Assembly (NCBI RefSeq): GCF_006345805.1
Contig: NW_021825944.1
Location: 1-13,952, forward strand
DNA: 13,952 bases
From: Octopus sinensis
Lineage: Eukaryota
Reading direction: 5' to 3'
Below the pieces are notes generated by a model. It was not told where the DNA came from. It saw only the letters and a program-made list of their open reading frames with translations, and ran no database searches. Position numbers and translations under genes: made by a program. Positions within the stretch are counted from its first letter, which is position 1. Each line of letters starts with the position of its first letter. Shown here one piece after another: positions 1-10,876 of this stretch.

Positions 1-60
1 TATGCTAGACCACTGGTCTTAATTTATAAATATCAATTTCTACCCCTTAATTAATTTTAA

Positions 61-78
61 TATTATATATATATTGTT

Positions 79-114
<36 letters not shown>

Positions 115-447
115 TATGTATATATATATAATATAATATATATATATATGTTTATGTATATATATATATTTTATGTATATATATATATATATATATGTTT
201 ATGTATATATATATATATGTTTATGTATATATATATATATATGTTTATGTATATATATATATATATATATGTTTATGTATATATATATATATGTTTATGT
301 ATATATATATATATATGTTTATGTATATATATATATATATATGTTTATGTATATAATTATATGTTTATGTATATATATAATATATATATATATATGTTTA
401 TGTATATATATATATATATACATATATCTATATATATTATATATATA
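61..447. repeat. Compound (TA)n minisatellite with recurring TGTTTATGTA unit
   Basis: About a dozen TGTTTATGTA motifs separated by variable (TA)n runs. Confidence 0.95.
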
Positions 448-1162: not shown

Positions 1163-1376
1163 ATATGGGTACAGGACATCAAAAAAAAAACGATGAACAC
1201 AATGAGAAACGAAAGCATAACAACAAAAACATAGAAAGTGTCTTTTTTCAAACAACGAAAAAAACAGATTACAAGACATACAACACAAGGAATATTCCCC
1301 TTCTTCAGTTGTCCCTGCTTCATCTACTCCGCGTGATGAAGGTAAGGACAAGACATGACTTCGTTGAACCAGTTCA
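1163..1376 (-). mobile_element. Repeat fragment with hammerhead-like scaffold and T-rich tail (possible Penelope-like terminal-repeat remnant)
   Basis: 1211-1302 is about 88-90% identical (by eye) to 2038-2129 in opposite orientation; minus strand has GTC-TTGTCC...GGACAA-CTGAAGA. Family assignment is inference. Confidence 0.55.
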
Positions 1377-1435
1377 TATATATATATATATATATATATA
1401 TAAATGAAAGAATGGAGTCGAACGAAGATTTTAAC

Positions 1436-1540
1436 AAAATTCCTTTACTCTCAACACATGTATCGAAGACTGCATACTCTTAATTCCGAAGGAATAAAGG
1501 GTGCATTATGCCGTCTTCTCATCAGTAAAGACAAGGAACC
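1436..1540 (-). ncRNA. Mirror copy of the hammerhead, predicted inactive
   Basis: Reverse complement of 1664-1768 except GAAA->GATA (position 1462, A14) and stem I closing C2.1->A (position 1526). Confidence 0.8.
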
Positions 1541-1663
1541 TCTATCAGCCTCAAAATTGACGTCATTGCTTATAACGGATTATTTAAAAAAAACACTCAT
1601 TATCAGTGTGGACACCATGTAGGCAGTCATCAAAAAGTTTTTGTTCGTCTTGAGGCTGATAGA

Positions 1664-1768
1664 GGTTCCTTGTCTTTCCTGATGAGAAGACGGCATAATG
1701 CACCCTTTATTCCTTCGGAATTAAGAGTATGCAGTCTTCGAAACATGTGTTGAGAGTAAAGGAATTTT
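1664..1768 (+). ncRNA. Type I hammerhead ribozyme with complete catalytic core
   Basis: Stem I CTTTC 1674-1678 / GAGAG 1752-1756, 2x2 internal loop, TTCCTT 1666-1671 / AAGGAA 1759-1764; CTGATGA 1679-1685; stem II GAAGAC 1686-1691 / GTCTTC 1734-1739 (canonical G10.1-C11.1), extended by GCATA/TATGC; GAAA 1740-1743; stem III ACATGTGT 1743-1750; GTT triplet 1749-1751, predicted cut after 1751. Confidence 0.88.
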
Positions 1769-1951
1769 GTTAAAATCTTCGTTCGACTCCATTCTTTCAT
1801 TTATTCATATAAAAAAACACACAAATTTCCACACAAGAACACGTGGTTTCTGCCCTTGGCATGTATCTTCAACCGTGTTTTCTGACGTGAATTTGCTACC
1901 CAGGTATCGATTAACCGAATTATCCATACTAACATAATTCATTCACCTACT

Positions 1952-1967
1952 ATATTTATATATATAT

Positions 1968-2129: not shown

Positions 2130-2156
2130 TTATATATTATATATATATATATATAT

Positions 2157-2566
2157 GCACAGGATTGGCTGTGTGGTAAGGAGCTTGCTTACCAACCACA
2201 TTATTCCGGGTTCAGTTCCACTCATTGCGTGGAACCTTCGGCAAAAGTCTTCTGCTATAGCCTCGGGCCAACCAAAGACTTGTGAGTGGATTTGGTAGAC
2301 GGAAACTGAAAGAAGCCTGTCATATATATGTATTGTGCATGTGTGTGTTTGCGTGTCTGTTTGTCAGCCCTCCATCGATTGACAACTGATGTTGGTGCGT
2401 TTACATCGCCGTCACTTAGCGTTTCGGCAAAACAGTGACTAATATAAACAAGTACTAGACTTACAAAGAATATGTCCTGGAGACGATTTGCTCGACTAGA
2501 AGCGATGCTCCAGCACAGCCGCAGTCAAATGACACAAACAATTAAAAGATTAAATGAGTAAAAGAA
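2157..2566 (+). mobile_element. Full-length tRNA-derived SINE, copy 1 (octopus OR/OK-like, CORE-like segment)
   Basis: A-box-like TGGCTGTGTGG 2166-2176, B-box-like GGTTCAGTTCC 2209-2219, internal (TA)/(TG) microsatellite about 2322-2350, 3' CAGTC-AAAT-GAC hairpin and AAAAGA-type tail; aligns end to end with 9077-9486. Family name is from recognition only. Confidence 0.9.
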
Positions 2567-3004
2567 TACGTCTGCGCACAAGTTTATGCAATTTTTCCCC
2601 TTCTACCAAATATTTACATATCCCAAAGTTATTATATCCAAACCATTAATCATTCCCTCTAATCTATCATTCCCTCTAACCGTTTGCAACCTATCATTAC
2701 TCTTCTCTCCTTATTCTCTATTATTTCTGCTTTCTATTTACGTATTTTCAATACTGTTGCTGTTGCCAGAAAAATGTCCAGTAAACTAAGTATAATTGCT
2801 AAATGCGCTTAACGTTATCCACATTAGATCGCATTAATTTGATTTAATTTAATTTAGCAATTAAAAGATTGCATGGCAAAACAACAACAATCTAAACTGT
2901 AAGAACGCGTCTGAGCTAAATAAAACTGAAGGACAGCATTTTAACTTAGCTTTTATTGATATTTTCTGCTGGTCGTTAACCAACTGTTGACGTAAGAGGG
3001 TATA

Positions 3005-3339: not shown

Positions 3340-3530
3340 TTTTATTCTTTTACTTGTTCCAGTCATTTGACTGCGGCCATGCAGGACTTATTCTTTTATA
3401 GCCTAGGACTTATTTTGTCGGCTCTCTTTAACCGAACCGCCAAGTTACGCGGACGTAAATACACCAGCATCGGTTGTCAAATGATGGCAGGTAACAAACA
3501 CAGAAATACAACACACGACTCACACGCATA
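3340..3530 (-). mobile_element. SINE 3' half (body and tail only), with internal deletion
   Basis: rc reads TTGACAACCGATGCTGGTGTATTTACGTCCGCGTAACTTGGCGGTTCGG...GCATGGCCGCAGTCAAATGACTGGAACAAGTAAAAGAATAAAA; it begins exactly at the SINE internal microsatellite. Confidence 0.9.
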
Positions 3531-3557
3531 TATATGTTATATATATATATATATATC

Positions 3558-3590
<33 letters not shown>

Positions 3591-4339
3591 TATTATACAA
3601 TGCATATATATATATATACATATGCATATATATATATATACATATGCATATATATATATATATATACGTATGCATATATATATATATATATATATAGATA
3701 TATACATATGCATATATATATATATATATATACATATGCATATATATATATATATATACATATGCATATATATATATCAATATATATATATATACATATG
3801 CACATATATATATACATATATGCATATATATATATAATATATATATATATATGCATATATAATAATATTATATATATGCATATATAATATATATATATTA
3901 TACATATGCATATAGATATATATATATATGCATATGCATATATATATATATATATACATATGCATATATATATATATATATATATATACATATGCCATAT
4001 ATATATATATATATATACATATGCATATATATAAATATATATATACATATGCATATATATATATTATATACATATGCATATATAATATATATATGATATA
4101 TATCCATATGCATAATATATATATATTATACATAATGCATATATATATATATTATACATATGCATATATATATATTATATATACATATGCATCTATATAT
4201 ATATACATATGCATATATATATATAACATATGCATATATATATATATATATAATGCATATATATATATATATATATTATATGCATATATATATATATATA
4301 CATAAATGCATATATATATAATATATATATATACATATC

Positions 4340-4371
<32 letters not shown>

Positions 4372-4642
4372 GCATATATATATATACATATGCATATATA
4401 TATATATATACATATGCATTATATATATATATATACATATGCATATATATATATATACATGCATATATATATATATATATATACATATGCATATATATAT
4501 ATATACATATGCATATTATATACATATGCACATATATATAGTATATATACATATGCATATATTATATATATATATACATATGCATATATATATATATAAC
4601 ATATGCATATATTATATATATATATATTACATATACATATGC

Positions 4643-4673
<31 letters not shown>

Positions 4674-4954
4674 AACATATGCATATATATATATTATATA
4701 TATATATATATGCATATCTATATATATATATATATACATATGCATATATATATATACATATGCATATATATATATATATACATCTATGCATATATAGATT
4801 ATATATATATATTTATATATATATATATATATATACATATGCTATATATATATATATATAATATATATATATATATACATATGCATATATATATAATTAT
4901 ATATATATATATACATATGCATATATAATATATATATATATATATATCATATGC

Positions 4955-5022
<68 letters not shown>

Positions 5023-5070
5023 GCATATACATATGCATATATATATATATTATACATATGCATATACATA

Positions 5071-5107
<37 letters not shown>

Positions 5108-5199
5108 GCATATATATATATATATATATATATACATATGCATATATATATATATATATATATATTATATTACATAATGGCATATTATTATTAGACATA

Positions 5200-5242
<43 letters not shown>

Positions 5243-5334
5243 GCATATATATATATATACATATGCATATATATATATATACATATCATATATATATATA
5301 ATATCATATGCATATATATATATATATATACATA

Positions 5335-5375
<41 letters not shown>

Positions 5376-5422
5376 TATATATTATATATATATATATACA
5401 TATGCACATATATATATATATA
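3531..5422. repeat. Compound satellite block 1: TACATATGCA unit with (TA)n spacers
   Basis: Dozens of ACATATGCATA motifs in the same polarity between TA runs. Confidence 0.97.
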
Positions 5423-7621
5423 AATCCTTAAATCCTTAAAAATGTTTTTAGCCCGAAGGCCGCGGCCATGCTGGGGCACCAACCGCTGAATGAGCTACAC
5501 TAGTTTGTGAATCCACCTCTGATACGTGGCACTTGATCAAGGGAGTTCGATGCTGCTGCCCGCATCCGTGTCTCCTGTCGTGAGGTAGGTTCATCTGGGA
5601 CTCCCACAAGAAGAGAATCCAGTTAGTTTTAAAAAACCCACATCCACACCATGTAAGTTTCTCAGGCATTTAGGGAGGATGTTAAAGACTGTGGTCCTCT
5701 GAAACCCAGCTGTTGCAGTATCTGGACCTGTATTTTGATGGTGATGTTGGAATCCTTGGCACCAAGCAGCGGGCGCCCCGTTCTGCGGTTGGAATAACTT
5801 AATGCCAAAGTTTGGGACAAGACCCTCCAGGATTTTCCAGATGTATATCACTGCATATCTCTCCCGGCCTCCGCTCCAGGGAGAAGAGGTTTAATACCTT
5901 CAGTCTTTCCCAGTAGCTGACATTTTGCATTGAGACGATTTTCTTTGTGTAGCTTCTCTGAGTTGCTTCGAGTTCTGCTGTTTGTTTTATATTGTGTGGT
6001 GACCAAGTTGGGAGCAGTAGTCCCAAGCGGCTGAGGACAAATGTTTTCCATAGGACCATCAGTGTCTCCTTCTCTCTTGTTCTGAAAGTTCGGAGAATCC
6101 ATCAGCTAGCCGTCTGCATTTTATCACCAGATTAGCAATATGCATTTGGAAAGATGCATCATTGCTCATTGTCAATGCCCAGTCACGCACTGATTTTGAC
6201 TCAGGGATTGCACTTTTTCCTGGGCCAGTGTATCCAGTCTTCACGTCATTTAACCTTTGTGTGCCAGTAGCGCAGGGCCTGGAACTTACCTGCATTAAAC
6301 TGCCATGTTGTTGTCCTCAGCCCACCTGTATATTGTGTCCAGCTCATGTTGCAGATGCGCAATATTTTCAGGGTTTTGTTTGCGTGGGAGACTTTTGTGT
6401 CATCTGCATAGCTAGCAAGGGTGGTCATCGTAGCAACTGAAGGCATGTCTGAAAGGGCCACTATGAACATCAGTGGCCCCAAGACAGTGCCCTGTGGGAC
6501 AACGCTTGTTATTTGCGTTTCCCTGGGTGGCTCCATTGCTCACACTGCCTGTTTTCGTCTTTTAGGAAGTTGTGCAGCCACTCTCCAAGTTTCCCGCCTA
6601 TGCCAGACCACGCAGTTTGTGACAGATCATACCATGGTCGACTTTATCAAAGGCTTTTGCAAAGTCAAGATATATTACATCCACATTTGAGCCATTTAGT
6701 AGCTTTTTCAACACCCATCATAGTGTTGCAGGAGCTGTGTTAGGCAGCCCTCTACCTGGTCGAAATCCATGCTGGGTGTCAGACAGTAAGTCATTTTCTT
6801 CAAGGAACATGATTAGTTTCTTACGACTATCGTTCCATGACTTTGCTGATGGTGTGAGGTCAGAGAGATAGGCCTATAATTTTTAGCATCTGCTCTGCTA
6901 CCTCCCTTATGGATAGGCATATTACCCCGCCCTCTTTCAGTTTGACTGGGAGCTTACCACTTGCAAGAAAGCTCTGAAAAAGAAGCTGTAGCGGTTTTGC
7001 AGGGCTCGTTTTGCACGATTTGAGAGCATCGCTGGGAATCCATCAGGTCCAGCAGCTGGTTTTGGTCAATCTCATCAATGGCTAGTGTGATATCATCTTC
7101 TTCGATGTTGATGTACTCAATTTTTGCTCTTTGGCCGCTGGTAAAGTGGCAAAGAATTCTTCTGGGTGTTTACTTGCCTGTGTCCTAGAGGTGTAGTGAA
7201 CACACTTTGGAACTGTTCGTTCAGTATTCACTTATCCTCGTGGGATTTCCTGTGAGAGAGCCATCTTTTGGGAAGAGGGTCCTATTCTCTGGTGCACTGT
7301 GGCTGTCTCTTTGCAAACTTAAAGAAAGCTTTAGGGTTTGATTTTATATTTTCTATTACCCAAGCTTCTTTATCTGCTCTCTCCTTTCATGGGACTGATG
7401 TAGACTTTTCTCAGTTGCCATTAGCATTCTTTCGAGCCGAGACTCTCACCACTTTTGGTGTGCTTGCTCAGGCGTTTGCAATCCTTGTTCGTCGTCTCAT
7501 AAGAATCCTCCTTTCTCTAGGGATCCTGTTTTTGTTCTTGTGTGTGCTGGCCCTGCACATTGGGACATATTTGTCACATATGGCTTGTAATATGGACACG
7601 AAGTGTTTTGTGTTTCATGTT
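5423..7621 (-). mobile_element. 5'-truncated CR1-group non-LTR retrotransposon (LINE)
   Basis: Minus-strand ORF2 motifs: IKSNPKAFFKFAK linker (about 7300-7360), YLDFAKAFDKVDHG (6631-6672), VPQGTVLGPL (about 6474-6500), YADD (6399-6410), YWERLKVLNLFSLERR, WKILEGLVPNFG, PDEP...RAAASNSL, stop at 5500-5502; short 3' UTR ending in a tail of two 8-mers (AATCCTTA x2, 5423-5438); flanking 22-bp direct repeat TATGCACATATATATATATATA at 5401-5422 and 7622-7643. Confidence 0.95.
5500..7621 (-). pseudogene. Disrupted ORF2 (reverse transcriptase, linker and C-terminus; endonuclease domain lost by truncation)
   Basis: LDFAKAFD and PQG/YADD motifs lie in different frames; further frameshifts near 5867 and 5620; SGVPQG motif reads SVVPQG. 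Confidence 0.92.
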
Positions 7622-7813
7622 TATGCACATATATATATATATACCATATGCATATATATATATCATATGCATATATTATATATATATATATACATTGCAT
7701 ATATTATATATTATATACGCATATGCATATATATATATATATACATATGCATATATTATATATATATATACATATGCATATATTCTTAATATATATATAT
7801 ATACATATACATA

Positions 7814-7844
<31 letters not shown>

Positions 7845-7862
7845 CTTACATATACATATGCT

Positions 7863-7893
<31 letters not shown>

Positions 7894-8009
7894 TATACAT
7901 ATGCATATATTATATATATATACACATATGCATATATTATATTATATATATACATATGCATATATTATATATATATATATATATACATATGTATATTATA
8001 TATATATGC

Positions 8010-8040
<31 letters not shown>

Positions 8041-8234
8041 CATATGCATATATAATATAATATATATATACATATGCATATATATATATATATACATATG
8101 CATATATATATAATATAATATGCATATATATATATACATATGCATATATATATATATATATATATTATATATACATATACATATGCATATATATATACAT
8201 ATGCATATATAATATACATATACATATGCATATA

Positions 8235-8286
<52 letters not shown>

Positions 8287-8587
8287 ATATATATATATAT
8301 ACATATACATATGCATATAATATATATATATATATACATAATATAATATATATCATATACATAGCATATATATATATATATATATATATACATATGCATA
8401 TATATATATACATATGCATATATATATATATACATATGCATATATATATATATACATATGCATATATATATATACATATGCATATATATATATGCATATG
8501 TATATATATATATATATATAGTATATACATATGCATATATATATATATATATATATATTATACATATGCATATATTATATATACATA

Positions 8588-8621
<34 letters not shown>

Positions 8622-8643
8622 TATATATATATATATATGCATA

Positions 8644-8711
<68 letters not shown>

Positions 8712-8929
8712 GCATATATATATATACATATGCATATATATATATATATGCATATATATATATATATCATATGCATCATTATATATTATACATATGCATA
8801 TATATATATACATATGCATATATATATATAATATATATATATACATATGCATATATATATATATATATATATAATATATATATATATATACATATGCATA
8901 TATATATAATATATATATATATACATATG

Positions 8930-8966
<37 letters not shown>

Positions 8967-8968
8967 TA

Positions 8969-9005
<37 letters not shown>

Positions 9006-9072
9006 GCATATATATATATATTAATATATAATATACATATGCTTATGTATATATTATATATGTATATATATT
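7622..9072. repeat. Compound satellite block 2: TACATATGCA unit with (TA)n spacers
   Basis: Same unit and polarity as 3531-5422. Confidence 0.97.
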
Positions 9073-9076
9073 TGTA

Positions 9077-9486
9077 GGCGGCAGGAGTGGCTGTGTGGTA
9101 AGTAGCTTGCTAACCAACCACATGTTTCCGTCTTCAGTCCCCACTGCGTGCATCTTCGGGAAGTGTCTTCTTCTGCTATAGCCCCGGGTCGACTAATGCC
9201 TTGTGAGTGATTTGGTAGACGGAAACTGAAAGAAGCCTGTCGTATATATGTATATAATATATACATATATATGTGTGTGTGTGTGTTTGTCCCGCCCCCT
9301 GGCATTTTGCTTGACAACCGATGCTGGTGTGTTTTACGTCCCCGTCACTTAGCGGTTCGGCAAAGAGACCGATAGAATAATCCCCGGGGTCGATTTGCTC
9401 GACTAAGGCGGTGCTCCAGCATGGCTGCAGTCAAATGACTGAACAAATAAAAGAGTAAAAGAGTGAAAGAGTAAAAGTGTAAGAGT
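9077..9486 (+). mobile_element. Full-length tRNA-derived SINE, copy 2
   Basis: GGCGGCAGGAGTGGCTGTGTGGTAAG head, internal (TA)(TG) run about 9244-9285, GGTGCTCCAGCATGGCTGCAGTC-AAAT-GACTG 9410-9441, degenerate (AAAGAGT)n tail to 9486. Confidence 0.92.
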
Positions 9487-9750
9487 ATATATATATACCT
9501 ATGCATATATATTATATATAGATATGCATATATTATATTTTTATGCATATATATATATATGCATATATATATATATATACATATGCATATATATATATTG
9601 CATATAATATATATATATTATATACACATATGCATATTATATATGCATATAATATATATTATATATATATATATATACACATATGCATATATATATATAC
9701 ACATATGCATATATACATATATGCATATATATATAATATATATATATACA
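9487..9750. repeat. Compound satellite block 3: TATGCA unit
   Basis: Continuation of the ACATATGCATA unit after the SINE. Confidence 0.9.
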
Positions 9751-9853
9751 TATAGATATATATATATTATATATATATATATCTATATTATAATAATATA
9801 TATATATTATAATATATATATATATATATATAATAGATATATATAATATATAT

Positions 9854-9925
<72 letters not shown>

Positions 9926-10715
9926 ATAATATATATATATATATAGATATATATATATAATATATAGTTAGATCTATATATATAAGATATAGATATATAT
10001 ATAGATATATATATATATATATAAGATAGATATATATATATATATAGATATATATATATATATATATAGATATCTAATTAATATATATATAGATATATAT
10101 ATATATATATAATAGATATATATATATATATATTATAGATATATATATAGTATATATAGATATAATATATATATATATATAGATATAGTAGATTATATAT
10201 ATAGATATATATATATCTATATATAATATAGATAGATATATAATCTATAATAGATATATATAATATAATAGATATATATATATATAGATATATAATATAG
10301 ATATATTAATATAGATATATATATATATATATAGATATATATATATATATGATATATAGAATATATATATATATATAGATATAGAGATATTATATAGATA
10401 TATATATATATATAGATATAGATATATTATAGAGTATAGTATATATAATATATATAGATATATATATAGATATAGATTATATATATATAGAATATAGATA
10501 TATATATATAGATATATTATTAGTAGAGATGATATATATATATAGATATATATAATATATATATAGATATAATATATAATATCTATATAGATATAGATAT
10601 ATATATATAGATATATATAATATATAGATATAGATATATATATATATATAGATATAGATATTATATCTATATATATAATATATATATATATACAACACAT
10701 GCATATATATATAAC
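9751..10715. repeat. Compound satellite block 4: TAGATA unit with (TA)n
   Basis: TATAGATATA motifs replace TATGCA motifs. Confidence 0.95.
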
Positions 10716-10876
10716 TATATACGACGGGTTTCATCCAGTTTCCGTCCACCAAATCCACTGAGAAGTGTTTGGTCGGCCCGTGACTATATGAGAAGACACT
10801 TGCCCAAAGTGCCACGCTGATGGACTGAACTCGGTACCATGTTGTTGGAAAGCAAGCTTTTTACCACACAGCCACT
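10716..10876 (-). mobile_element. SINE 5' half (tRNA-like head plus CORE-like segment)
   Basis: rc reads AGTGGCTGTGTGGTAAAAAGCTTGC...GAGTTCAGTCC...GGCACTTTGGGCAAGTGTCTTC...GGACGGAAACTGGATGAAACCCGTCGTATATAG; it ends exactly at the SINE internal microsatellite. Confidence 0.9.

What the first reader, a model, noticed from the sequence alone, without database searches (positions are those of the whole stretch)
1401..1803. Complete hammerhead ribozyme embedded in a young 154-bp inverted duplication
Seen: all conserved hammerhead core positions are present on the + strand (CUGAUGA, G10.1-C11.1, GAAA, U16.1, GUU), with an 11-bp-plus stem I carrying a 2x2 internal loop, an unusually long multi-segment stem II (54 nt), and stem III ACAUGUGU that gives 2 bp in cis but an 8-bp self-complementary duplex (two G.U) in a dimer. 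The unit is duplicated in inverted orientation at 152/154 identity. Known: Penelope-like elements carry type I hammerheads in their terminal repeats and often leave inverted terminal segments; non-coding retrozymes use the same ribozymes. Inference: a recent insertion of a PLE-related or non-autonomous ribozyme retroelement. A read-through transcript could either self-cleave or fold into a 154-bp dsRNA that masks the ribozyme (potential Dicer/ADAR substrate). Whether the family is already catalogued is unknown.
Basis: partly seen in the sequence, partly recalled or inferred. Interest (0 to 1): 0.85.

Follow-up and report, generated by a model that had tools for sequence, protein, structure and literature searches.

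The report
Hammerhead ribozyme in inverted retroelement relic
A complete self-cleaving hammerhead ribozyme motif sits in one arm of a nearly perfect 155-bp inverted repeat, which looks like two head-to-head truncated copies of a ribozyme-carrying retrotransposon; this arrangement is already known from other animals, so it is a new example and not a new kind of thing.

Summary
Arms 1400-1554 and 1650-1804 are inverted copies with 153/155 matches. The + strand of the right arm carries a full type I hammerhead: helix I, CUGAUGA, a 54-nt helix II with G10.1-C11.1, GAAA, an 8-nt quasi-palindromic helix III (ACAUGUGU) and GUU, with cleavage predicted after 1751. No motif this good appeared in 4 Gb of composition-matched random sequence.

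The only two arm differences hit ribozyme-critical positions (A14 and N2.1), so the inverted copy reads GAUA and is predicted dead.

No Rfam hammerhead model detects the motif, and neither does a model I built from three validated animal hammerheads. The probable cause is the very long helix II.

The window holds no other copy, no tandem repeat and no RT/GIY-YIG ORF. No relatives could be retrieved from any searchable collection, so family conservation is untested.

Four features match published Penelope-like-element (PLE) behaviour: head-to-head truncated copies, a (TA)n flank, a short palindromic helix III, and dual hammerheads on opposite strands. My best reading is an inert relic of a PLE-type or PLE-mobilised insertion. 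I rate it a new member of a known kind, of modest interest.

The parts
1378..1399 (.). (TA)11 microsatellite abutting the left end of the palindrome; putative insertion target
   Evidence: Read directly. PLE insertion bias for (TA)n / AT-rich DNA comes from the literature.
1400..1554 (-). Left arm: inverted copy of the element's terminal 155 nt. Its hammerhead homologue (about 1432-1547, minus strand) reads GAUA instead of GAAA and has A instead of C at 2.1, so it is predicted inactive.
   Evidence: The two mismatches are at 1462 and 1526.
1555..1649 (.). 95-nt non-palindromic spacer. It is probably the further 5' extension of one of the two truncated copies; which one is unknown.
   Evidence: pairing stops at 1555/1649. 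Inference for the rest.
1650..1804 (+). Right arm: sense copy carrying the intact hammerhead
1657..1678 (+). Helix I, 5' strand: 5 bp next to the core, a 2x2 internal loop, 6 bp, a bulge, then up to 8 more bp
1679..1685 (+). Core box CUGAUGA (C3-A9)
1686..1739 (+). Helix II, 54 nt: 6-bp base starting with G10.1-C11.1, a G/A mismatch, a 4-5-bp segment, then a distal hairpin. Unusually long.
1740..1743 (+). Core box GAAA (G12-A15.1). A14 = 1742 is one of the two positions that differ between the arms.
1743..1750 (+). Helix III ACAUGUGU: 2 bp plus an AUGU loop in cis. It is self-complementary (8 bp, two G.U) between two molecules.
   Evidence: Validated mussel (ACGCGCGU) and axolotl (ACACGUGU) hammerheads have the same design.
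1751..1752 (+). Predicted self-cleavage site (GUU|G) between U1751 (H17) and G1752 (N1.1)
   Evidence: Position follows from hammerhead numbering. Cleavage itself is not tested.
1752..1772 (+). Helix I, 3' strand
1805..1955 (+). Right flank of uncertain status, ending at a second (TA)n array (1956-2036). It is either unique target DNA or a 3' extension ('tail') of the sense copy. If the latter, the whole insertion is 1400-1955 inside one (TA)n array.
   Evidence: No similarity to the element. Inference only.

Best explanation
The right arm carries a genuine type I hammerhead ribozyme inherited from a ribozyme-bearing retroelement. That element was most likely a Penelope-like element (PLE) or a short non-autonomous element mobilised by PLE machinery.

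The locus consists of two severely 5'-truncated copies of the element's 3'-terminal region, joined head to head. The RNA 3' ends face outwards, at 1400 on the minus strand and 1804 on the plus strand.

The inferred mechanism is this. A PLE-type GIY-YIG endonuclease cut both strands of an AT-rich (TA)n target. Both 3'-OH ends primed reverse transcription of element RNA. The two short cDNAs were then joined in the middle, which produced a palindrome at the moment of insertion.

The ribozyme has the short palindromic helix III typical of animal type I hammerheads. It would therefore cleave efficiently only as a dimer (tandem copies or two RNAs).

At this locus there is no tandem partner, and the inverted copy has lost A14 and the 1.1-2.1 pair. 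Any RNA spanning both arms would fold into a 155-bp hairpin. The locus is therefore most likely an inert, fairly recent relic and not a working ribozyme gene.

Shown: the motif, the palindrome, the positions of the mismatches, the folding energies and the flanks. Inferred: retroelement origin, priming on both strands, and activity only as a dimer.
For: - Complete core and all three helices at exact positions.
- It satisfies the published catalytic boxes CUGANGA / GAAAY / RUH (supplement of PMC7229834).
- No match of equal quality in 4 Gb of random sequence.
- The MFE fold of 1655-1775 is the hammerhead junction, z = -3.35.
- Helix III is an 8-nt (quasi)palindrome directly comparable with the experimentally cleaving mussel (GAAACGCGCGUC) and axolotl (GAAACACGUGUA) ribozymes.
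- The predicted homodimer (-76.8 against 2 x -34.0 kcal/mol) is the double-hammerhead with an intermolecular helix III.
- Helix I of 5 bp up to an internal loop and helix II of 6 bp resemble PLE-type hammerheads (helix I 4-5 bp, helix II 6-8 bp; small palindromic helix III in several PLE variants; G10.1-C11.1 conserved) (PMC4209133).
- The same paper reports dual hammerheads 100-700 bp apart on opposite strands, attributed to truncated PLEs.
- PLE insertions often have an adjacent inverted 5'-truncated copy and a bias for microsatellites, (TA)n in the Naiad clade (PMC8557442).
- A purified PLE protein cleaves AT-rich DNA and extends both strands (PMC11167929).
- The left arm abuts (TA)11 and the right flank begins TTC-ATATA-A7.
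- Arm identity is 153/155.
- GC is 0.37, in the range of animal hammerhead repeats.
Against: - No Rfam hammerhead model matches, even at E<=10 on a 121-nt slice.
- A model built from three validated type I hammerheads recovers only GAAACAUGUGU at 5.5 bits.
- There is no second copy, no direct or tandem repeat (pLTR) and no RT/GIY-YIG domain in the 14-kb window. The only RT is a LINE (jockey-like) remnant 3.6 kb away.
- No relatives were retrievable, so there is no family alignment, no covariation and no evidence for a constant 3' end with variable 5' truncation.
- The motif lacks the unpaired nucleotide between A9 and G10.1 that is typical of PLE minimal hammerheads.
- The 54-nt helix II has no counterpart in the hammerheads described in the papers I read (helix II 4-8 bp).
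- (TA)n is so common in this window that a (TA)n flank is weak evidence.
- Self-cleavage is untested.
Confidence: 0.6

Rival explanations
1. A solo hammerhead-bearing element (a single PLE 3' end, a retrozyme monomer or a SINE-like hammerhead retroposon) inserted once. The palindrome arose later by a local inverted duplication, for example replication template switching. It is unrelated to the insertion mechanism.
For: - The structure alone cannot separate formation at insertion from later duplication.
- The right flank is not (TA)n, whereas the left flank is.
- The two arm differences show that some time or error has passed since the arms were identical.
Against: - The left arm ends exactly where (TA)n begins, as expected if the arm end is an element terminus joined to target DNA.
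- Inverted truncated partners and opposite-strand hammerhead pairs are a documented, recurrent PLE signature.
- No flank sequence is included in the palindrome.
Confidence: 0.15
2. A miniature inverted-repeat or foldback DNA transposon with 155-bp terminal inverted repeats and a TA target-site duplication, moved by a transposase. The hammerhead is a captured passenger or plays no part in its mobility.
For: - Long terminal inverted repeats, 405 bp overall, AT-rich, with TA dinucleotides at both ends (1401-1402 and 1802-1803).
- The hairpin shape gives sub-threshold matches to hairpin-precursor miRNA models, MIR5048 at 72.8 bits (gathering 160) and MIR9486 at 43 bits (gathering 100).
- A second, older inverted repeat (1211-1302 / 2038-2129) surrounds the locus, so foldback-type structures exist here.
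Against: - A full hammerhead with this quality of stems is not expected by chance (0 in 4 Gb). To my knowledge hammerheads have not been reported in DNA transposons; they are well documented in retroelements.
- A TA duplication means nothing inside a TA microsatellite.
- No second copy is present in the window.
Confidence: 0.12
3. Assembly or sequencing artefact: the inverted junction (a palindromic chimera) does not exist in the organism.
For: PLE-type tandem/inverted insertions are known to cause assembly problems (PMC8557442). Near-perfect palindromes are a classic chimera product.
Against: - The arms are separated by a 95-nt unique spacer, differ at two positions, and have different unique flanks on each side. 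A simple fold-back read artefact would not give this.
- The hammerhead in the right arm would remain real in any case.
Confidence: 0.05
4. The hammerhead-like motif is a chance resemblance in an unrelated hairpin-rich repeat.
For: - No covariance model recognises it.
- The helix II length is atypical.
- One other weak descriptor match in the window (minus strand, CUGAAGA at 1308) shows that relaxed descriptors do produce noise.
Against: - The random expectation for a motif with these stems is below about 0.1 per genome.
- Features not required by the descriptor are also present: G10.1-C11.1, GAAAY, RUH, and a palindromic helix III identical in design to validated ribozymes.
Confidence: 0.04

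Closest known systems
Hammerhead ribozymes in the pseudo-LTRs / 3' regions of Penelope-like elements (Cervera & de la Pena 2014, PMC4209133; Craig et al. 2021, PMC8557442; Frangieh et al. 2024, PMC11167929)
   Same: - Type I topology and G10.1-C11.1.
- Short helix I (5 bp up to a loop) and an enlarged helix II base (6 bp).
- Small palindromic helix III, which implies action as a dimer.
- Occurrence as truncated copies, including pairs on opposite strands 100-700 bp apart.
- Inverted 5'-truncated partner.
- Insertion next to (TA)n / AT-rich DNA.
   Different: - No RT-GIY-YIG ORF, pLTR direct repeat or recognisable 'tail' at this locus.
- No unpaired base between A9 and G10.1.
- Helix II is 54 nt in three segments, against 6-8 bp plus a loop.
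- Homology to any catalogued PLE could not be tested.
Metazoan non-LTR retrozymes with canonical type I hammerheads (Cervera & de la Pena 2020, PMC7229834; Li et al. 2026 preprint, 10.64898/2026.07.22.740005)
   Same: - Type I hammerhead with the CUGANGA / GAAAY / RUH boxes.
- Helix III of 2 bp plus a tetraloop forming an 8-nt palindrome, as in the mussel Mg353 and axolotl Ax353 ribozymes.
- Low GC (0.37).
- No coding capacity.
   Different: - Retrozymes are head-to-tail tandem repeats of about 170-400 bp. Here there is no direct repeat, only an inverted pair.
- Canonical helix I / helix II lengths (6 bp / 4 bp with interacting loops) are not matched.
Rfam hammerhead families (searched as part of the whole Rfam 15 library)
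   Same: The same conserved core and three-helix junction when read by hand.
   Different: No Rfam family of this kind scores at E<=10 on this sequence. By that criterion it lies outside the curated models, probably because of the long helix II.
Long-TIR MITEs / foldback elements and hairpin-RNA loci
   Same: A near-perfect 155-bp inverted repeat with a short loop, predicted to give a -288 kcal/mol hairpin RNA.
   Different: It carries a complete ribozyme in sense orientation in one arm. No meaningful target-site duplication and no other copies are visible.

Membership tests
Hammerhead ribozyme, type I | Conserved catalytic core: C3 U4 G5 A6 N7 G8 A9, G12 A13 A14, A15.1-U16.1, H17 not G | tested here: met
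   CUGAUGA 1679-1685, GAAA 1740-1743, U1750, U1751. It also meets the GAAAY and RUH boxes used by the de la Pena laboratory.
Hammerhead ribozyme, type I | Three helices around the core, with helix I open-ended and helices II and III closed | tested here: met
   The MFE fold of 1655-1775 gives exactly this junction, z = -3.35. Descriptor values are helix I 5 + >=6 bp, helix II 6 bp, helix III 2 bp.
Hammerhead ribozyme, type I | More than chance | tested here: met
   0 matches of equal quality in 4 Gb of composition-matched random sequence; the relaxed descriptor gives 498 per Gb.
Hammerhead ribozyme, type I | Recognised by curated covariance models (Rfam gathering score) | tested here: not met
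   No hammerhead family at gathering score or at E<=10. A model built from three validated type I hammerheads finds only an 11-nt fragment at 5.5 bits.
Hammerhead ribozyme, type I | Conservation and covariation across family members | not testable with these tools
   The only other copy is the left arm (2 differences, both damaging). No relatives were found in the searchable collections.
Hammerhead ribozyme, type I | Site-specific self-cleavage | not testable with these tools
   Needs in vitro transcription.
Penelope-like element (PLE) insertion | ORF with telomerase-like RT and GIY-YIG endonuclease | tested here: not met
   Pfam scan of all stop-free segments >=40 aa (after excluding Y/I-rich low-complexity ones) found only a LINE-type RVT_1 remnant at about 5450-7500 on the minus strand and no GIY-YIG. 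A missing ORF is expected for heavily 5'-truncated copies, so this result does not argue against the PLE reading.
Penelope-like element (PLE) insertion | Pseudo-LTR: partial tandem (direct) repeat | tested here: not met
   No direct copy in the window or flanks.
Penelope-like element (PLE) insertion | Adjacent inverted 5'-truncated copy forming an inverted repeat, with hammerheads on opposite strands | tested here: met
   Arms 1400-1554 / 1650-1804. The feature is described.
Penelope-like element (PLE) insertion | Insertion into microsatellite / AT-rich target | tested here: inconclusive
   (TA)11 lies directly left. Only ATATA-A7 lies directly right, with a further (TA)40 151 bp away. (TA)n is ubiquitous in this window.
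Penelope-like element (PLE) insertion | Sequence homology of the hammerhead-bearing end to an autonomous PLE of the same genome | not testable with these tools
   The source genome and TE libraries are not available here.
Metazoan non-LTR retrozyme | Head-to-tail tandem repeats of about 170-400 bp, each with a type I hammerhead | tested here: not met
   No direct repeat of the unit.
Metazoan non-LTR retrozyme | Expression as linear and circular RNAs of unit length | not testable with these tools
   No RNA data.
MITE / foldback DNA transposon | Terminal inverted repeats plus a target-site duplication, in many copies with constant ends | tested here: inconclusive
   Inverted repeats are present. 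A TA duplication is possible but uninformative inside (TA)n. No other copy is in the window.

The most novel reading that the evidence does not exclude
This may be the first sighted member of an uncatalogued hammerhead family in what looks like a cephalopod genome. Its three-segment 54-nt helix II would make the family invisible to current covariance models. The palindromic insertion may form a hairpin RNA that masks one live ribozyme against one dead copy. In that case the concentration of both arm differences on A14 and N2.1 (about a 1% event under neutrality, a post hoc estimate) would reflect a functional filter on ribozyme activity during or after retrotransposition, and the hairpin could feed small-RNA or RNA-editing pathways.
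Probability: 0.15. Interest if true: 0.55.

Novelty: new member of a known kind. Interest (0 to 1): 0.3.

Why it matters
If the family proves abundant, the locus would add a mollusc lineage, apparently cephalopod, to the catalogue of animal hammerhead-bearing retroelements. It would also show that covariance-model screens miss hammerheads with a long helix II, so genomic ribozyme counts may be underestimates. The natural live/dead pair in one palindrome gives a ready-made control for cleavage assays. Otherwise it is an ordinary transposon relic with no indication of host function.

Tried and rejected
- Rfam at gathering threshold on the whole window, and at E<=10 on 1300-1900 and on 1655-1775. 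No hammerhead family matched. Only sub-threshold hairpin-type miRNA models matched the palindrome.
- A covariance model built from three experimentally validated type I hammerheads (coral, mussel, axolotl; sequences from the supplement of PMC7229834), searched with filters off. Only the fragment 1740-1750 matched, at 5.5 bits. A fourth sequence (Ax330) was dropped because MAFFT misaligned its GAAA box.
- Family retrieval by exact or gapped DNA patterns. Two metagenome scans and two viral-contig scans gave 0 hits.
- Family retrieval through spurious ORFs of the element in the 5.8-billion-protein database. Two searches gave no homologues.
- A LINE RT search to identify the organism and fetch more of its genome. 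The best named hit was an Octopus jockey-like RT at 58% identity, and the genome itself is not held.
- A test for a diverged tandem or inverted copy of the element in the 75-nt left and 151-nt right flanks. Scores equalled the shuffled nulls.
- A second descriptor hit on the minus strand (CUGAAGA at 1308). I rejected it because helix II is only A-U, G-U, G-U, there is no G10.1-C11.1, and the homologous outer-repeat arm lacks the core.
- A tRNA/SINE origin. ARAGORN found nothing. A B-box-like CGTTCGACTCC at 1780-1790 has no A box upstream.

Full report
**1. What is in the sequence**

Positions i and 3204-i are complementary from 1400/1804 inwards to 1554/1650. This gives two 155-nt arms with only two mismatches (1462/1742 and 1526/1678) around a 95-nt non-palindromic spacer at 1555-1649.

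On the + strand of the right arm, every element of a type I hammerhead is present at exact spacing:
- helix I 5' strand 1657-1678
- CUGAUGA 1679-1685
- helix II 1686-1739 (54 nt; six contiguous base pairs at its base beginning with G10.1-C11.1, then a G/A mismatch, a second paired segment and a distal hairpin)
- GAAA 1740-1743
- ACAUGUGU 1743-1750 (A15.1-U16.1 and C-G closing an AUGU loop)
- U1751 as H17
- helix I 3' strand 1752-1772 (5 bp, a 2x2 internal loop, 6 bp, then more)

The predicted scissile bond is 1751/1752. Folded alone, 1655-1775 adopts exactly this three-way junction as its minimum-free-energy structure (-34.0 kcal/mol, z = -3.35 against dinucleotide shuffles).

**2. Is it more than chance?**

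I wrote a descriptor in the style used in the field: CUGANGA, GAAA, A15.1-U16.1, H17, with helices adjacent to the core, helix II up to 70 nt and helix III up to 30 nt. In the window it finds this site and one weak site.

In 4 Gb of random sequence with the window's non-microsatellite composition, the relaxed descriptor fires 498 times per Gb. Only 3 per Gb reach helix I >=5 bp, helix II >=6 bp and helix III >=2 bp. None also has a >=6-bp extension of helix I. The observed extension is 10 bp, and G10.1-C11.1 comes on top of that. A motif of this quality is therefore expected well under once in a genome of several Gb.

The motif also shows features the descriptor did not demand: GAAAY, RUH, G10.1-C11.1 and a palindromic helix III. 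Cervera and de la Pena list the last two among their arguments against a random origin (PMC4209133).

**3.

The only two differences between the arms lie on ribozyme-critical positions. Position 1742 is A14 of GAAA. Position 1678 is N2.1, which pairs with G1.1.

Read on the minus strand, the left arm is therefore ...UUUA-CUGAUGA...GAUA..., with a mutated invariant A14 and a broken first pair of helix I. From the general hammerhead mutagenesis literature (my own knowledge), changes at A14 abolish activity. So only one arm carries a complete hammerhead.

Two neutral substitutions would both hit the roughly 13-19 core or core-closing positions out of 155 with a probability of about 1%. This is a post hoc calculation. 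I record it as unexplained and do not treat it as evidence of selection.

**4. Formal model searches are negative**

Rfam 15 gives no hit at gathering score in the window. It gives no hammerhead family at E<=10 on 1300-1900 or on the 121-nt ribozyme slice. Only hairpin-type miRNA models (MIR5048, MIR9486) match the palindrome, far below their thresholds.

I then built a covariance model from three experimentally cleaving type I hammerheads: coral Amil224, mussel Mg353 and axolotl Ax353 (sequences from the supplement of PMC7229834). With filters off it recovers only GAAACAUGUGU (1740-1750, 5.5 bits).

By the curated-model criterion the sequence lies outside known hammerhead families. By the descriptor criterion it is a textbook core.

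**5. Surroundings**

- The left arm abuts (TA)11 (1378-1399).
- The right arm is followed by TTC-ATATA-A7-CACAC, then 151 nt of unique sequence and a (TA)40 array (1956-2036).
- An older inverted repeat of about 90% identity (1211-1302 / 2038-2129) brackets the whole region.
- There is no other copy of the element in the window and no direct or tandem copy. The flanks are no more similar to the element than shuffled controls.
- A Pfam scan of all stop-free segments of at least 40 aa, after excluding Y/I-rich low-complexity ones, finds no GIY-YIG domain. The only RT is a frameshifted LINE-type RVT_1 remnant at about 5450-7500 on the minus strand. Its best named relative is an Octopus jockey-like protein at 58% identity.
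- Together with the SINE-like repeats and the huge TA-rich microsatellites, this suggests a cephalopod-like genome. The organism is not established.

**6. Attempts to find relatives**

Gapped and exact DNA patterns found nothing in the metagenome collection (two scans) or the viral collection (two scans). Two protein searches with the element's accidental ORFs also found nothing. The genome of origin is evidently not in the searchable collections. Family conservation, covariation, copy number and truncation profile remain untested.

**7. Folding of the alternatives**

- An RNA spanning 1400-1804 folds into a near-perfect hairpin of -287.9 kcal/mol, which buries the ribozyme.
- A transcript starting in the spacer (1590-1830) keeps helix II but not helix I in its MFE structure.
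- Two ribozyme RNAs form a dimer of -76.8 kcal/mol, against -68.0 for two monomers. In the dimer, helix III is the intermolecular ACAUGUGU duplex and the helix I strands are swapped, which is the classical double-hammerhead.

**8. Comparison with what is known**

- Animal type I hammerheads typically have helix III of 1-2 bp capped by a small palindromic loop, and they work as dimers (PMC4209133; PMC7229834).
- The mussel and axolotl ribozymes have 8-nt palindromic helix III segments (ACGCGCGU, ACACGUGU) of exactly the design seen here.
- PLE hammerheads have a short helix I (4-5 bp), a larger helix II (6-8 bp) and conserved G10.1-C11.1. Most are dispersed single motifs from truncated PLEs. 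Some occur as pairs 100-700 bp apart on opposite strands.
- PLE insertions often carry an adjacent inverted 5'-truncated copy and show a bias for microsatellites; (TA)n is the reported bias of the Naiad clade, which itself lacks canonical hammerheads (PMC8557442).
- A purified Poseidon-clade PLE protein cuts AT-rich DNA and extends both strands (PMC11167929).

Priming on both strands of a double-strand break, each from the 3' region of element RNA, would directly produce what is seen: two outward-facing 3' ends with truncated 5' ends joined in the middle.

Differences from PLE hammerheads:
- no unpaired base between A9 and G10.1
- a helix II several times longer than any in the hammerheads described in the papers I read
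- no ORF, pLTR or identifiable tail at this locus

The retrozyme alternative fails its defining test here, because there is no tandem repeat. A MITE reading cannot be excluded on structure. However, it would require a DNA transposon to carry a complete hammerhead, for which I know no precedent.

**9. Verdict**

The interpretation as a recent insertion of a PLE-related or non-autonomous ribozyme retroelement is the best available explanation (confidence about 0.6). It rests on architecture and literature and not on homology.

The locus itself is most likely an inert relic. It has one intact ribozyme without a tandem partner, one dead inverted copy, and a hairpin that would mask both in a read-through RNA.

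It is a new member of a known kind. The points of modest interest are the long helix II, which hides it from covariance models, and the coincidence that both arm differences hit the catalytic core region.

Noticed in passing
window 1211-1302 and 2038-2129: An older inverted repeat (about 93 nt, about 90% identity) brackets the whole hammerhead locus. The right arm abuts (TA)40 directly. The left arm is separated from (TA)11 by 75 nt of unique sequence. It may be a foldback/MITE-type element into whose TA-rich loop the hammerhead element inserted.
   Followed up: partly
window 1462/1742 and 1526/1678: The only two differences between the 155-nt arms fall on A14 and N2.1 of the hammerhead. This is about a 1% coincidence under neutral substitution (post hoc estimate). 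The direction of change is unknown without a family consensus.
   Followed up: partly
window about 1205-1322, minus strand: A second, weak hammerhead-descriptor match: CUGAAGA at 1308-1302, a 52-nt 'helix II' closed only by A-U, G-U, G-U, and GAAA at 1249-1246. The relaxed random rate is about 0.5 per Mb, so a second hit in 28 kb is unusual. The motif lacks G10.1-C11.1, and the homologous outer-repeat arm lacks the core. I judged it chance.
   Followed up: partly
window 1780-1790 (mirrored at 1414-1424): CGTTCGACTCC resembles a pol III B box / tRNA T-arm (GGTTCGANNCC) near the element's 3' terminus. No A box lies upstream and ARAGORN finds no tRNA.
   Followed up: partly
window 1359-1377 vs 1405-1427: A short imperfect inverted repeat spans the (TA)11: CTTCGTTGAACCAGTTCAT against the element terminus CTTCGTTCGACTCCATTCTTTCAT. 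This is what Rfam's weak mir-3688-like hairpin hits pick up. It could be a remnant of an earlier terminal fragment. It was not significant in alignment tests.
   Followed up: partly
window about 5450-7500, minus strand: A degraded non-LTR (jockey/CR1-like) reverse-transcriptase remnant with several frameshifts and stops (RVT_1, E = 9e-18). The best named relative is an Octopus jockey-like RT at 58% identity.
   Followed up: yes
window 2156-2580, 9082-9470, 10692-10874 (-), 3341-3377 (-): Four copies or fragments of one SINE-like repeat at 80-86% identity. From memory it resembles the abundant octopus SINE, which I did not verify.
   Followed up: partly
window 60-440, 3520-5420, 7620-9020, 9500-10700: Very large TA-rich microsatellite/minisatellite arrays ((TA)n, TATATGCA-like and GTTTATGTA-like units) with GC of 8-14%. 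They make up roughly 40% of the window.
   Followed up: no
window 1586-1597 and 1812-1822: The motif A7-8CAC occurs both in the palindrome spacer and just right of the right arm. It could mark a unit boundary if the element is more than unit length. It was not significant in alignment.
   Followed up: no
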